11,190 nt of DNA from Octopus sinensis (Eukaryota): NCBI RefSeq assembly GCF_006345805.1, contig NW_021827153.1, positions 1 through 11,190 on the forward strand. The letters are read 5' to 3'. The position numbers and the translations under genes are program-made. Position 1 is the first letter of the stretch. Each line of letters begins with the position of its first letter. The notes under the pieces are model-generated. The model was not told the origin of the DNA and made no database searches. It was given only the letters and a program-made list of their open reading frames with translations. Positions 103 through 9,269 of the stretch are shown here, piece by piece.

Positions 103-905
103 GAGTGGGTTTCTAACAAAGATACAAAGCTCCATCATCGGAAAGTAGATAACGAAAATAATGTCATGTTTTAAACCTGAGAAAAGTCTTGCAGAATTTT
201 ATTGTTCCACTTACGGATTATGTTTGTAATGTGCGAATCAGATTTCTTTTTCTGAAAATCCAAGTTTATCCAGACTGGCAGTTAGGCATGTACTTACGAA
301 ACCAAACTATGGCGTGTATGAGTCTATGTATGAAATATGATAGCATGTTTCCAGGTTTCTATTTAAAGAAAAAAAAACGAGGAAAACCACAATGTGTATG
401 TCACTCACGCACAAGCATATATGTATGCGTGTGAATGTATGTAAATCTTAAATGAAAATTCTTTTGAACTAACAAAGATATTCTGTCAGGATGTATATAT
501 ATATTATTTGAAATTATTTCTATTCTGTCTCGATTTCCTTCCGGTTGTATAGCACATATGCAGAAGCGAACAAACTCTGTTTGTATGGACAGGAATCAAT
601 TACATATGTACAGATATGTTTACATACACAAGTGTACACTCATATAATGAATGTGAGCAGAGTTTACTATTACAAAGAAAACGAAAAATATATATAAATA
701 TGATAGACAGAGACAGACAAAAAGACAGACAGACAAACAGAGATATAAGGATAGAGAGAGGCGTGGAGAGTGATGGATTTTAAAGTCGGTGGAACATCTT
801 TGTTCATAGATTGGTCATTCAGGACTGACCAGTAAAAGCAATAATAAATATATTTAAGCATTTCATAGCACTAAAATCTATGATTGCTCAATAGATTAAT
901 CTATT

Positions 906-1234
906 GTTAGAGCGTAGAGCTTGCGATCGTGAGGTTGTGAGTTCGATTCCTGGACCGGGCTGTGTGTTGTGTTCTTGAGCAAGACACTTTATTTCACGTT
1001 GCTCCAGTTAACTCAGCTGTAGAAATGAGTTGCAACGTCACAGGTGCCAAGCTGTAACGTCCTTTGCTTTTCCCTTGGATAACATTAGTGGTGCGGAGAG
1101 GGGAGGCTGGTATGCATGGGTGACTGCTAGCCTTCCATAAACAATCTTGCCCTGACTTGTGCCTGGAAGGGTAATTTTCTAGGTGCAATCCCATGGTCTG
1201 TGTCATGACCGAAGGGGGTCTCCTCCTCCTCTTC
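906..1234 (+). mobile_element. tRNA-derived SINE, family A, copy 1 (5'-truncated, A box missing)
   Basis: Pol III B box GTTCGATTCC at 941-950. Colinear homology with the minus-strand copy at 5547-6428 (e.g. ttgagcaagacactttatttc, ttcccttggataac, ctaggtg). Ends gaccgaagggggtctc plus a (CCT)n tail. CTATT flanks both sides (901-905, 1235-1239) as a candidate 5-bp TSD. Confidence 0.9.
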
Positions 1235-1266
1235 CTATTAAATTGTCACATGCGCGGTGAAAAAAA

Positions 1267-1753
1267 TGACTTGCATATTTATTGTTAATTCGTTCCGGTA
1301 AATTCGAACGTGGATATGCTGATCGCTGTTATGCTTCATCGCAGGAGATCAGCTTCTTCTTTACGACGAATGTGTGTTCACAACACACACGATTCATCAG
1401 AACAAAGGATTCTGGAGCACCCGGTGTTTCGACATCGCTGTGTCTCATCAGTGACAGACACCTCAGGATTAATGAATCTCATAATAACTATTTTTAACTA
1501 CAGCCAACAAACTGTTCGTTGATCCGTACCGATATCTGCCAACTGATAAATACATCGTCAAATGTGAGGTGAACAGATCCAAAGATGTCGAAAAACCACC
1601 TGTCCCAGAATCCCTTATGCAAACGAAGCGAGCCTCTTATAAACACACATTTATCATAAAAGTGAAGTTGCTCTCTTGTGATGGAACAAATCAGCGATTA
1701 GCATTTTCACGTTCGAATATGCCTAGACGCATTAAGAATAGATTTACAAGTCA
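1267..1753. repeat. Long imperfect inverted repeat (arms 1267-1450 and 1570-1753, 119-bp spacer); possible ancient foldback/MITE-like element
   Basis: Manual alignment of the left arm to the reverse complement of the right arm gives 132/184 identities with zero gaps. Termini are TGACTTG...CAAGTCA. No TSD found. Confidence 0.9.
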
Positions 1754-3412: not shown

Positions 3413-3467
3413 ATATATATATATATATACATATATATGTATGTATATATGTATGTATATATATATA
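2938..3467. repeat. (AT)n/(GT)n/(ATGT)n microsatellite cluster with a short unique island (about 3030-3175)
   Basis: Direct dinucleotide and tetranucleotide runs. Confidence 0.9.
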
Positions 3468-3762
3468 GGCGCTGAAGTAGCTGTGTGGTAGGTACCAACA
3501 CATGGTTTGGGGTTCAGTCCTATTGCGTGGCACCTTGGGCAAGTGTCTTCTACTATAGCCTCGGGCCGACCAAAGTCTTGTGAGCGGATTTGGTAGACGG
3601 AAACTGAAAGAAGCCCGTTGTATGTGTGTGTGTGTGTGGTTCCATGCATGCATGTATATATTTGTGCGTCTGTTTGTCCCACTACCATCGCTTGACAACC
3701 GATGTTGGTGTGTTGACGTCCCTGTAACCTAGCGGTTCGGCAAAAGAGAACCGATAGAATAA
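3468..3762 (+). mobile_element. tRNA-derived SINE, family B, copy 1 (3'-truncated)
   Basis: Colinear with 9270-9552 (gtggcaccttgggcaagtgt, ctactatagcctcgggccgaccaaag, ggaaactgaaagaagcccgt, gcttgacaaccgatg, agcggttcggcaaaagag). Degenerate A box and B box ggttcagtcc. Internal GT/AT microsatellite. Stops at gatagaataa. Confidence 0.92.
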
Positions 3763-4659: not shown

Positions 4660-5182
<523 letters not shown>

Positions 5183-5546: not shown

Positions 5547-5589
5547 TAAAGATCCCCTTCGGTCATGAATGATCATGGGATTACACCTA
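5547..5589 (-). mobile_element. 3' terminal piece of SINE family A copy 2 (split by LINE insertion)
   Basis: Reverse complement (taggtgtaatcccatgatcattcatgaccgaaggggatc) matches the 3' end of copy 1 (ctaggtgcaatcccatggtctgtgtcatgaccgaagggggtc, 1180-1220). Confidence 0.88.
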
Positions 5590-6133
5590 CCGCTCTATGT
5601 CACGCTGGTGAGACCCATATTGGAGTACGGGATTCATGCCTCTTCCCCTTATCTCCTCAAAGACATACAGCATCTCGAAAGAGTCCAGAAGCTGGCTACC
5701 TGCATGGTTCTTGGTCTCAAGCATTTGTCTTATGAAGAAAGGCTGAAGACGCTCAACCTTTATTCTCTAGAAAAACGACGACGCCGTGGTGATCTCATTC
5801 TTGCTCACAACATCATAAGCGGAAAGTGTAACCTCTCGAAAGAGCTGTTCTTCACTACTGCTCCAGAGCGTCGGCTGCGGGGTCATTCCGAAAAGCTCTA
5901 TCTGCGACGATTTTATCTCAATCGAAGGAGAGGGGGCTTTCTCCGTCCGGGTTGCGGATCCGTGGAATAAGCTGCCGGACGAGATAGTGTAGATGCCGAT
6001 GACCGCTCGGTTCAAAGTCTCTCTTGACCAGAAATGACCTGAACTCTTTACATGAACACCACCCTGTACATAACTCCATGTCCCCCTACATGGCCTTGCT
6101 TTTTGCTTTTTGAGCCAAAAAATTAACTAACTA
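5590..6133 (+). mobile_element. 5'-truncated CR1-clade LINE: C-terminal ORF2 remnant plus 3' UTR
   Basis: Translation LYVTLVRPILEY...HLERVQKLAT...LSYEERLKTLNLYSLEKRRRRGDLI...RLRGHSEKL. After a +1 shift in the G run at 5932-5936 it continues FSVRVADPWNKLPDEIV*..RFKVSLDQK, the typical CR1-type post-RT region. Ends in a (TAAC)n-like tail. TSD ACACCTA at 5583-5589 and 6134-6140. Confidence 0.92.
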
Positions 6134-6428
6134 ACACCTAGAAAGTTACCCTCCGAGACACAAGTCCGGGCAAGGTTGTTTATGGATGACCTGCAGTCGC
6201 CCTAGCAAAACAACCTCTCCTCTCCATAACACTGATGTTATCCAAGGGAAAGGCAAAGGGGCCGGTACATCTCGGCACCAGTGACATGCCAACTCATTTT
6301 TGCCAGCTGAGTGAACTGGAGCAACGGGAAATAAAGTGTCTTGCTCAAGAGCACAACACAGCCCCATATGGAATCGAACTCACAACCTCATGATTGTGAG
6401 CCCGACGCTCTAACCACTGAGCCATGCG
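6134..6428 (-). mobile_element. tRNA-derived SINE family A copy 2, main body with intact Pol III promoter
   Basis: On the minus strand: A box TGGCTCAGTGG (6424-6414) and B box GTTCGATTCC (6379-6370). Colinear with 906-1186. Confidence 0.92.
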
Positions 6429-6585
6429 ATGGTATTAAATGTAGTTTTAATGCGTAATTTGTTATGGATCGATCTTTACAAATGTTTCTTGTATTTCGGA
6501 CTGCTAACTTCTTACTAGGTCATGTAAAAAAACGAAACAAAATTGGAGTCATATCCACACCCATTTTGTTTTCGACCCTTACATA

Positions 6586-6622
6586 TGAGAGGCGTTCAAT
6601 AAGTAATGCCCCTGACCCACTT
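6586..6622 (+). repeat. Mariner left TIR
   Basis: tgagaggcgttcaataagtaatgcccctgacccactt, preceded by TA. Confidence 0.95.
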
Positions 6623-6658
6623 CCCATAGCAGTAGAGCAACGAAACTTGGCACAGTTA

Positions 6659-7697
6659 TTAGTCTTTTTCTACATAGGAACCACCCAGAGTTACGCATTT
6701 CTCCCATCGTTTGATGCGGCTCTGGAGACCGTTTTTGTAGAAGAACCCAGCTTGGTCCTCCAACCTCAACGTGACTTCAGAAAACAAGGCTGCATCATCT
6801 GGGAAACGCTTTCCTTTCAAAAACAACTTCATGATTGGGAAGAGGTGAAAATCAGAGAGTGCAAGGTCAGGAAAGTAGGGGGGATGGGGAGGAGTTCATA
6901 GCCATACGCCTGTGCTTCTGATCTGGCGACAAGCGAGTTGTGGACCGGAGCGTTGTCCTGCAGGAGGAGGATGCCTTTGCTGATCTTGCCCCGCCTCTTG
7001 ATTTTGATAACTTCTCTTAATTTCCTCAAAAGTGAAGCATATAGGCTCCTGCAATTGCCAGGAAATCTGTCATCACTACTCCGTCCTGGTCCCAGGAGAC
7101 TGTGAGCATGACCTTGCCAGCGGAGGGCTGCACCCTTGCCTTCTTTGGAGGGGGTGAGTCACGGTGCTTCCACTGCATTGACTGGGATTTGGTCTCTGGA
7201 TCATCGTGATGGACCCAGGTTTCATCCTGTGTAATCAGTCTTTTGAAACATTTTGACTCATCTTCTTGGCACATCTCCAAATTCACCCTCGAGCACTCGA
7301 CGCGTTCTTGCTTCTGGAAAGGTGTGAGCAACCTGGGAATCCATCTGACAGACACCTTTTGCATATGCAAATGGTCATGAATGATAGTTTCCACAGACCC
7401 GGTACTAATCTTGACCTCATGGGCTATTTGGCGAATAGTTATGCGTCGATCTTCCAAAATGGCAGCCTCAACTTGATGGACAGATGCCTCATCAATGGCA
7501 GAAGTGGGGCGACCAGATCTGGGAGCTGTTTCCACAGAGTTCCGACCGTGTTTGAATTCACGATGCCAGCGTTTTACAAGGTCATATGATGGGGCATCAT
7601 CACCATAAGTTACTTTCATTTCATCAAAAGTCTCCCGTGGTGTGCGTCCTTTCAAATACAAAAACCGGATCACTGCTCGACACTCAACAGGCTCCAT
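6659..7697 (-). pseudogene. Mariner transposase pseudogene
   Basis: ATG at 7697 (MEPVECRAVIRFL...RSGRP...WIPRLLT...ITQDETW). Frameshift near 7040, then QDNAP. Second frameshift near 6885, then HPPYFPDLALSDFHLF...RWEKC..LGGSYVEKD, stop at 6659-6661. 34 residues lie between the 2nd and 3rd catalytic Asp after frame correction. A short in-frame deletion (about 4 codons near 7055) is inferred from family knowledge. Confidence 0.93.
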
Positions 7698-7827
7698 TTC
7701 ACACTTGACTCGGTTCAAACACCTGTAAATCAGAAACCACAATTAATTCAGAGCTGTAATTTGCCACTTATTCTATAGAGATATAAATGATTGCACATGC
7801 AAGATTTCAGCTAGATCAAACAACTGC

Positions 7828-7864
7828 AAGTGGGTCAGAGGCATTACTTATTGAACGTCCCTCG
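7828..7864 (-). repeat. Mariner right TIR
   Basis: Reverse complement cgagggacgttcaataagtaatgcctctgacccactt, followed by TA. Confidence 0.95.
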
Positions 7865-8296
7865 TACATCATATTCCTAGGTCCTATATTTCTAAACTAC
7901 CTTTTTTGTATAAGTTCTTTAGTTACTTGAGATACGGTAAGGCAATTTGTCGTGCTGATGACGGTTGCTGAAGCAGAAACACGTATCAATGCCCACGACT
8001 GTCCTCCCATCTCCAGACAATAAACCTCTCTCTTTTTTTTTCCTTAATGGCATCTGAGCCCTGAAGAATTCCTGACTCTTAAGGTATTCTCCCCTTCTGA
8101 CAAGGAGCTGATCTTCATTGCCATTCGCTAACCAGGACACATCCTAGAGAGGCGGTTATTCTTATTATACTTAAAGGGTCCAGCTAGCAGAAACGTTAGC
8201 ACATCCCCTACTGTCATGTGTTTTACTTATATAATGGTGAACATGATAAAATGAGCGTTTGTATATGAATTCAAATATATGTCACATAATTCTGCA

Positions 8297-9162: not shown

Positions 9163-9269
9163 AATTATATAATATATATATAGATATATATAATATATTA
9201 TATAATACATATATAAATTGGTGGTTGTATAAATCTATATGTATATAAATAAATGTATATATATATATA
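9003..9269. repeat. (ATGT)n and (AT)n microsatellite cluster
   Basis: Direct tandem runs. Confidence 0.92.

What the first reader, a model, noticed from the sequence alone, without database searches (positions are those of the whole stretch)
1267..1753. Gapless, 72%-identical 184-bp-arm palindrome of unknown origin
Seen: 1267-1450 aligns to the reverse complement of 1570-1753 with 52 substitutions and no indels. Mismatches are spread evenly along the arms and across codon phases (18/18/16), so these are not inverted coding paralogues. There are 29 transitions and 23 transversions. Transitions split 13 vs 16 between G:U-compatible on the plus vs minus transcript, so there is no strand-specific wobble bias. 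Six CpGs are retained in both arms, while about 5 other mismatches look like CpG deamination. No TSD or transposase is evident, and it lies in the main microsatellite-free island of the left half of the window. Inference: 28% neutral divergence would usually include some indels, so arm register may be constrained. Candidates are a foldback/MITE family whose master copy already had divergent arms, a long hairpin RNA (endo-siRNA precursor or ADAR substrate, relevant if the host is a heavily editing cephalopod), or a cruciform-forming DNA element.
Basis: partly seen in the sequence, partly recalled or inferred. Interest (0 to 1): 0.7.

Follow-up and report, generated by a model that had tools for sequence, protein, structure and literature searches.

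The report
Decayed inverted repeat in octopus DNA
The 487-base palindrome is real, but it looks like an old, neutrally decaying inverted repeat in an octopus genome (a transposon relic or a small inverted duplication), not a hairpin that selection keeps in shape.

Summary
Bases 1267-1450 pair with the reverse complement of 1570-1753 over 184 nt, with 52 substitutions, no indels and a 119-nt spacer. This is far beyond chance (gapless score 89, against 13.7±2.1 in shuffles).

The inference that the register is constrained does not hold:
- Mismatches are placed at random.
- The transition/transversion ratio (1.26) equals that of other octopus repeat pairs (1.30).
- G:U-compatible changes show no strand bias (13 vs 16).
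- Both strands fold equally well.
- Repeat pairs from the same genome have about 0.06 gaps per mismatch, so zero gaps in 52 mismatches has P≈0.02-0.06. Two of 33 control alignments are also gapless.

The window's SINEs identify the host as an octopus close to O. bimaculoides. There, degenerate inverted repeats of this size occur about once per 8 kb.

The element has no target-site duplication, no coding signal, no Rfam or Pfam match, and no relation to the mariner 5 kb away. No other copy appears in about 103 kb searched.

Copy number in the host genome could not be tested. A long-TIR foldback/MITE relic, a local inverted duplication and two inverted copies of one repeat therefore all remain open. 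A cruciform role is rejected. If transcribed, the element would be a mediocre, passive ADAR substrate. Interest is low.

The parts
1267..1450 (+). Arm A of the inverted repeat (184 nt; GC 0.43; 12 CpG)
1451..1569 (.). Spacer or loop of 119 nt, unique sequence with no residual palindromy
   Evidence: spacer halves P=0.33; no other copy
1570..1753 (-). Arm B, the reverse complement of arm A at 71.7% identity with no gaps (GC 0.39; 7 CpG)

Best explanation
This is a relic of a single event that created two identical inverted arms around a short loop. Most likely that event was the insertion of a non-autonomous, foldback-type (long-TIR, MITE-like) DNA transposon of about 487 bp into an octopus genome. 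Since then both arms have decayed neutrally, by about 0.18 substitutions per site per arm (JC/K2P distance between arms 0.355-0.362). The element has no present function that depends on pairing. If a transcript runs through it, either strand would fold into a 184-bp imperfect duplex (79-80% paired counting G:U; longest uninterrupted helix 14-15 bp). Such a duplex could be edited passively by ADAR, as inverted repeat pairs are in other animals. Shown here: the repeat is real, it shows neutral-type decay, it has no coding or known-RNA signal, and the host is an octopus. Inferred: the arms were identical at birth, and the origin was a transposon.
For: The repeat is real and compact, with sharp ends. 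It is small, non-coding, and has no Pfam or Rfam match. Mismatches are randomly spread: longest match run 11 against 12.9 expected (P=0.76), and 13 adjacent mismatches against 14.6. The ts/tv ratio is 1.26 against 1.30 in octopus control repeats. G:U-compatible changes are 13 vs 16. Both strands fold equally well, with z -12.5 and -12.0. Gaplessness is only a mild outlier, P≈0.02-0.06. The window's SINEs match O. bimaculoides at up to 92% identity, so the host is repeat-rich. Degenerate inverted repeats with 100-330-nt arms at 64-78% identity occur about 8 times in 61 kb of that genome. Self-palindromic transposons that fold on themselves are documented, for example the Xenopus Harbinger repeat (PMC5625713).
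Against: No target-site duplication of any length from 2 to 11 bp was found, and the observed matches fall below the null. This argues against superfamilies with 8-11-bp duplications (hAT, Mutator, Merlin, P). The termini (TGACTTG...CAAGTCA) match no terminal motif I know, and do not match the resident mariner TIRs. No second copy was found in about 103 kb: the window plus 61 kb of O. bimaculoides and 31 kb of non-octopus contigs. For the octopus genome, the 72 kb of octopus sequence only bounds the family at about 10^5 copies or fewer. Arm A keeps more G/C and CpG than arm B (20 vs 9 directional transitions, P=0.06; 12 vs 7 CpG). Arms born together should decay equally.
Confidence: 0.4

Rival explanations
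1. A local inverted duplication. A 184-bp segment was copied in reverse orientation 119 bp away by a replication template switch or fold-back repair, and then decayed neutrally. No mobile element is involved.
For: There is no target-site duplication. Arms, spacer and flanks are all unique in about 103 kb. No terminal motif or partner transposase was found. The neutral-decay statistics are the same as for the best explanation.
Against: Inspection of the junction sequences showed no evident microhomology, though this was not tested formally. Small isolated inverted duplications are rarer than transposon-derived palindromes in animal genomes (general knowledge). The arm asymmetry in G/C content is not expected here either.
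Confidence: 0.3
2. Two independent insertions of one dispersed repeat, either full-length at about 184 bp or truncated alike, landed 119 bp apart in opposite orientations. The 28% divergence would then reflect each copy's distance from a family consensus, possibly with different ages.
For: This is the usual source of inverted repeats in this genome: about 8 such pairs made of multi-copy repeats occur in 61 kb. The G/C and CpG asymmetry between arms fits unequal ages. A 23-nt direct repeat lies immediately to the left of each arm (18/23 matches, P=0.004) and could be a shared target motif.
Against: No solitary copy was found in about 103 kb even with a profile search. A family dense enough to make a 119-bp neighbour likely should have appeared there. 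The control pairs have spacers of 400-1300 nt, none as short. Both ends of both copies coincide to the base. There is no tRNA, 5S or 7SL head and no A-rich or microsatellite tail at either end of the unit (sequence).
Confidence: 0.2
3. A selected long hairpin RNA (an endo-siRNA/hpRNA precursor, or a dsRNA kept as an ADAR substrate) whose register is held by selection. Compensatory changes would be invisible within a single sequence.
For: Zero indels is a mild outlier (P≈0.02-0.06). The hairpin is stable on either strand. CpG content is unusually high for the locus: o/e 1.18, a value reached by only 4% of GC-matched windows. Octopus is a heavy editor with abundant dsRNA-forming loci (PMC5625713).
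Against: There is no strand bias in G:U-compatible changes and no conserved blocks. The substitution spectrum matches neutral controls. The longest perfect duplex is 11 bp, or 14-15 bp with G:U, which is poor for Dicer and far from the nearly perfect dsRNA that hyper-editing tracks. There is no Rfam match and no homology of the arms to any gene that could be a target.
Confidence: 0.07
4. Inverted coding paralogues or pseudo-exons, or a cruciform-forming DNA element.
For: One frame (antisense frame 2) has only 1 stop in 120 codons across both arms. The single strand folds as DNA at -84.8 kcal/mol, z -7.6.
Against: Amino-acid identity is the same in all six frames (28-31 of 60-61), and mismatches are flat across codon phases. 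There is no Pfam hit and no protein relative. The six hits of the representative search are sums of sub-noise matches (under 5 bits each) to tandem-repeat 'proteins'. Cruciform extrusion needs near-perfect arms and a very short spacer (established knowledge). Here 119 bp would have to melt, and 28% of the stem is mismatched.
Confidence: 0.02

Closest known systems
Foldback-type or long-TIR MITEs, such as the palindromic ~200-bp Harbinger-derived repeat of Xenopus tropicalis (PMC5625713)
   Same: A small non-coding unit made almost entirely of two inverted arms around a short loop. It folds on itself into dsRNA when transcribed.
   Different: No target-site duplication, no recognisable terminal motif, no second copy seen, and arms only 72% alike. 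Family membership is unproven.
Inverted pairs of dispersed repeats, such as inverted Alu pairs in primates and inverted SINE pairs in octopus
   Same: Arm length (100-300 nt) and arm identity (65-85%). Several examples occur in 61 kb of O. bimaculoides. These are the usual passive ADAR substrates.
   Different: The arms here belong to no repeat family seen in the sample. The spacer is much shorter (119 nt against 400-1300 nt), and both ends of the arms coincide exactly.
Drosophila hpRNA (endo-siRNA) loci
   Same: A long inverted repeat with a loop that can form an intramolecular hairpin of hundreds of nucleotides.
   Different: hpRNA arms are highly complementary and derive from a target gene. 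Here complementarity is 72%, the longest perfect helix is 11 bp, and no parent gene was found.

Membership tests
MITE / foldback non-autonomous DNA transposon | Terminal inverted repeats at both ends of a short (<800 bp) non-coding unit | tested here: met
   184-nt arms at the ends of a 487-bp unit. No Pfam domain in any arm ORF.
MITE / foldback non-autonomous DNA transposon | Target-site duplication flanking the unit | tested here: not met
   For lengths 2-11 bp with offsets of ±4, the best matches are at or below the null (P≥0.8). A decayed 2-4-bp duplication cannot be excluded.
MITE / foldback non-autonomous DNA transposon | Multiple dispersed copies with different flanks | tested here: inconclusive
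   No copy in the window, in 61 kb of O. bimaculoides or in 31 kb of other contigs. This bounds the family only at about 10^5 copies or fewer. The host genome cannot be searched with these tools, and the protein-database route is uninformative, as a SINE control shows.
MITE / foldback non-autonomous DNA transposon | Termini shared with an autonomous partner element | tested here: not met
   No similarity to the TIRs or body of the resident Mos1-type mariner at 6583-7880. Other partners are not testable.
hpRNA / endo-siRNA precursor | Long, highly complementary inverted repeat able to yield ~21-nt duplexes | tested here: not met
   71.7% Watson-Crick pairing. The longest perfect run is 11 bp, or 14-15 bp with G:U.
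hpRNA / endo-siRNA precursor | Small RNAs mapping to the arms; arms homologous to a target gene | not testable with these tools
   No RNA data are available. No protein-level homologue of the arms was found.
ADAR hyper-editing substrate (inverted-repeat dsRNA) | Reverse-oriented similar sequence within 2 kb, at least 65% identical (criterion of PMC5625713) | tested here: met
   72% over 184 nt, 119 nt apart.
ADAR hyper-editing substrate (inverted-repeat dsRNA) | Long, nearly perfect dsRNA (>95% over at least 40 bp), transcription, and clustered A-to-G mismatches | tested here: not met
   The structural part is not met. Transcription and editing are not testable here.
Cruciform-forming palindrome | Near-perfect arms with a very short or absent spacer | tested here: not met
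   28% mismatches and a 119-nt spacer.
tRNA/5S/7SL-derived SINE (for the arm as a unit) | Pol III head recognisable as tRNA, 5S or 7SL; a tail | tested here: not met
   No ARAGORN hit. No Rfam hit in 1267-1753 at E≤1. No A-rich or microsatellite tail at either end of the unit.

The most novel reading that the evidence does not exclude
The hairpin is much older than its 28% arm divergence suggests and is held at about 72-80% pairing, in strict register, by selection on a long dsRNA. That RNA could be an editing-dependent or Dicer-dependent regulatory transcript in a cephalopod, with compensatory changes hidden inside the single sequence. The CpG richness and the absence of indels would then be real signals.
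Probability: 0.05. Interest if true: 0.6.

Novelty: new member of a known kind. Interest (0 to 1): 0.13.

Why it matters
It matters little. It is one more degenerate inverted repeat in a genome where such repeats occur every few kilobases. The useful outcome is negative: the absence of indels, which made the finding look special, falls within what other repeat pairs of the same genome show. Only if orthologues showed compensatory evolution, or the locus produced small RNAs or edited transcripts, would it become an example of a selected long hairpin in a heavily editing cephalopod.

Tried and rejected
1. Exact look-ups of three window ORFs in the assembly index found nothing.

2. A six-frame concatenated translation of 1260-1760 against 5.8 billion proteins gave no hit. 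A positive control with the window's SINE ORFs found only 2 proteins, both from O. bimaculoides. So this negative result says nothing about copy number.

3. The representative-library search with the arm-B ORF gave 6 'hits' at E down to 2e-17. For the top hit, P0123, re-scoring split the score into 31 sub-noise matches of under 5 bits each. P0124-P0126 are likewise tandem-repeat sequences with multiple matched stretches. I rejected these hits as spurious.

4. Degenerate DNA patterns from the best-conserved arm blocks found nothing in metagenome, viral or prokaryotic genome collections. None of these holds octopus DNA.

5. Contigs carrying close mariner relatives (L001, L002) share only the mariner with the window, so they are not the host.

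6. I tested whether the palindrome continues beyond the neighbouring SINE, and whether that SINE abuts it. It does neither: the SINE ends at about 1221.

7. I tested derivation from the resident mariner and found none.

P0122 could not be located.

Full report
**Observation**

The arms are 1267-1450 and 1570-1753, 184 nt each, with 132 matches and 52 substitutions (29 transitions, 23 transversions). There is no indel, and the spacer is 119 nt.
- The best gapless inverted-repeat score in 1001-2000 is 89, against 13.7±2.1 (maximum 22) in 200 dinucleotide-preserving shuffles.
- The phase split is 18/16/18.
- The ends are sharp. The outer flanks and the two halves of the spacer show no residual palindromy, even with gaps allowed (P=0.45 and 0.33).

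**Host and surroundings**

The window is eukaryotic, rich in microsatellites and full of mobile-element debris.
- Two SINE families in it (3463-3762 and 9235-9790; about 895-1221 and 6135-6427) have many copies in 61 kb of Octopus bimaculoides GCA_001194135.2, at up to 92% identity (loci L003, L004).
- The only proteins matching the SINE translations are from O. bimaculoides.
- The host is therefore an octopus, either this species or a close relative.
- A frameshifted Mos1-type mariner with its own TIRs lies at about 6583-7880. It is unrelated to the palindrome.
- The tRNA-derived SINE copy to the left ends near 1221, 45 nt before arm A, and is not part of the palindrome.

**Is anything constrained?**

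Mismatches are placed as randomly as a shuffle would place them.
- The longest match run is 11, against 12.9 expected (P=0.76).
- There are 13 adjacent mismatches, against 14.6 expected.
- There are 4-10 mismatches per 23-nt bin.

The substitution pattern and folding also look neutral.
- The ts/tv ratio is 1.26, against 1.30 for 3,065 differences in control repeat alignments from the same genome.
- RNA folds of the two strands are equivalent: -182 kcal/mol (z -12.5) and -194 kcal/mol (z -12.0).
- Counting G:U, 79% (+ strand) or 80% (- strand) of positions pair. The longest uninterrupted helices are 14 and 15 bp. The longest perfect Watson-Crick run is 11 bp.
- All six reading frames give the same arm-to-arm amino-acid identity (28-31 of 60-61).
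- There is no Pfam domain and no Rfam family at E≤1 inside the element.

**The missing indels**

This was the feature that made the finding look special, so I built an internal control.
- I took all repeat-pair alignments of at least 150 columns, with microsatellites masked, within the window plus L003 and L004, using one scoring scheme. This gave 58 alignments.
- They contain 3,169 mismatches and 193 gap openings, a ratio of 0.061. For 52 mismatches about 3.2 gaps are expected, and Poisson P(0) is 0.04.
- Empirically, 12% of runs of 52 consecutive mismatches are gap-free. This falls to 2% when the mariner coding alignment is removed.
- Two of 33 alignments with at least 45 mismatches have no gap at all, for example L003 7977-8135 vs 4967-5125, with 57 mismatches.
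- Arm A also has no homopolymer of 4 or more, which lowers its indel risk.
- Gaplessness is therefore a 1-in-20 to 1-in-50 event, noticed after the fact. It does not call for a register constraint.

**How common are such structures here?**

In 61 kb of O. bimaculoides there are about 8 inverted pairs with 100-330-nt arms at 64-78% identity and spacers of 400-1300 nt. This agrees with the report that octopus has an exceptionally high fraction of loci able to form dsRNA (PMC5625713). The present case differs in two ways: its short spacer, and arms that belong to no family seen in the sample.

**Origin**

What could be tested:
- There is no target-site duplication of 2-11 bp, with ±4 nt of slack. 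The observed matches are at or below a positional null. Since the arms keep 72% identity, an 8-11-bp duplication should still be visible. That argues against hAT, Mutator, Merlin and P-type elements.
- The termini match neither the local mariner nor any motif I can name from memory.
- BLAST and a profile (nhmmer --max) search find no other copy of the arms, spacer or flanks in the window, L003, L004, L001 or L002, about 103 kb in all.
- For the octopus genome this caps the family only at roughly 10^5 copies, from the 72 kb of octopus sequence.
- Routes to the host genome failed or were uninformative.

Three ordinary origins therefore remain open:
- a single foldback-type or long-TIR element (my best guess, about 0.4);
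- a local inverted duplication (about 0.3);
- two independent inverted insertions of one repeat (about 0.2).

The third is weakened by three points: no solitary copies were seen, the spacer is short, and the ends coincide exactly. It is mildly favoured by the asymmetry between arms. Arm A has G/C where arm B has A/T at 20 transition sites, against 9 the other way (P=0.06), and 12 CpG against 7.

**Function**

Nothing indicates one.
- A cruciform is excluded by the 119-nt spacer and the 28% mismatches. This rests on established knowledge of extrusion requirements; the DNA fold is given for reference.
- An hpRNA is unlikely at 72% complementarity.
- If transcribed, the element meets the lenient criterion of at least 65% identity that Porath et al. 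used for putative dsRNA. It does not meet their 'nearly perfect' class, which is the one hyper-editing tracks. At most it would be a mediocre, passive ADAR substrate, on either strand.

**Residual oddities**

- The element is CpG-rich for its neighbourhood: 23 CpG, o/e 1.18. GC-matched windows average 0.63, and only 4% reach 1.18. CpG sites carry no excess of mismatches. This fits a germline-unmethylated patch in a mosaically methylated genome; L003 has o/e 0.32 and L004 has 1.05.
- A 23-nt direct repeat sits immediately to the left of each arm (1239-1261 and 1551-1573). It has 18/23 matches, with P=0.004 for flank against spacer and about 0.13 expected region-wide. Because the arms are inverted, this repeat is not part of the palindrome. 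I could not explain it and treat it as probably chance.

**Verdict**

This is a real but ordinary feature: an old inverted repeat decaying neutrally. Its exact origin cannot be settled without a search of the octopus genome.

Noticed in passing
window 1239-1261 and 1551-1573: A 23-nt direct repeat (TAAATTGTCACATGCGCGGTGAA / TACATCGTCAAATGTGAGGTGAA, 18/23 matches) lies immediately to the left of each arm. It sits at the outer end of arm A but at the inner end of arm B. P=0.004 for flank against spacer, about 0.13 expected region-wide. It may be chance, or a shared insertion-target motif.
   Followed up: partly
window 1267-1753: The element is CpG-rich for its surroundings: o/e 1.18 against a mean of 0.63 in GC-matched windows. 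Arm A's 12 CpGs are reached by only 0.7% of 184-nt windows. The arms are also asymmetric, with arm A keeping more G/C and CpG than arm B.
   Followed up: partly
window ~895-1221 (+) and 5550-5589 + 6135-6427 (-): Two copies of a tRNA-derived SINE (A box and B box visible in the second copy: TGGCTCAGTGGTTAGAGCG...GGTTGTGAGTTCGATTCC). The second copy is split by a 545-nt insert (5590-6134) carrying an ORF that looks to me like a LINE reverse-transcriptase C-terminus (5569-5970, no Pfam hit). Copies of the SINE head also occur in O. bimaculoides L003.
   Followed up: partly
window ~6583-7880 (-): A frameshifted Mos1-type mariner has TIRs of about 30 nt (…CGTTCAATAAGTAATGCC…). Copies 89-95% identical in DNA lie on ENA metagenome-assembly contigs that share nothing else with the window. 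Protein relatives reach 88% in the mantis shrimp Oratosquilla and 70% in abalone, but only 63% in O. bimaculoides. This pattern suggests horizontal spread across phyla.
   Followed up: partly
window 3463-3762 and 9235-9790: Copies of the abundant octopus SINE, followed by microsatellite. They match O. bimaculoides copies at up to 92% identity, which identifies the host lineage.
   Followed up: yes
window 10549-10918: A long imperfect trinucleotide array (units in steps of 9-12 nt) reads as runs of M and V on one strand and S and P on the other. It produces artefactual ORFs of 224 and 120 aa.
   Followed up: no
proteins P0123-P0126 (representative library): A method caution. Predicted 'proteins' that are translations of tandem repeats gave E-values down to 2e-17 against a 63-aa query. 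In the top hit the score is the sum of 31 sub-noise matches of under 5 bits each.
   Followed up: yes
L003 4874-8136: An O. bimaculoides locus carries several mutually related 160-740-nt blocks at 64-87% identity, in both orientations. Two pairs are gapless with 54-57 mismatches. The repeat family was not identified.
   Followed up: no
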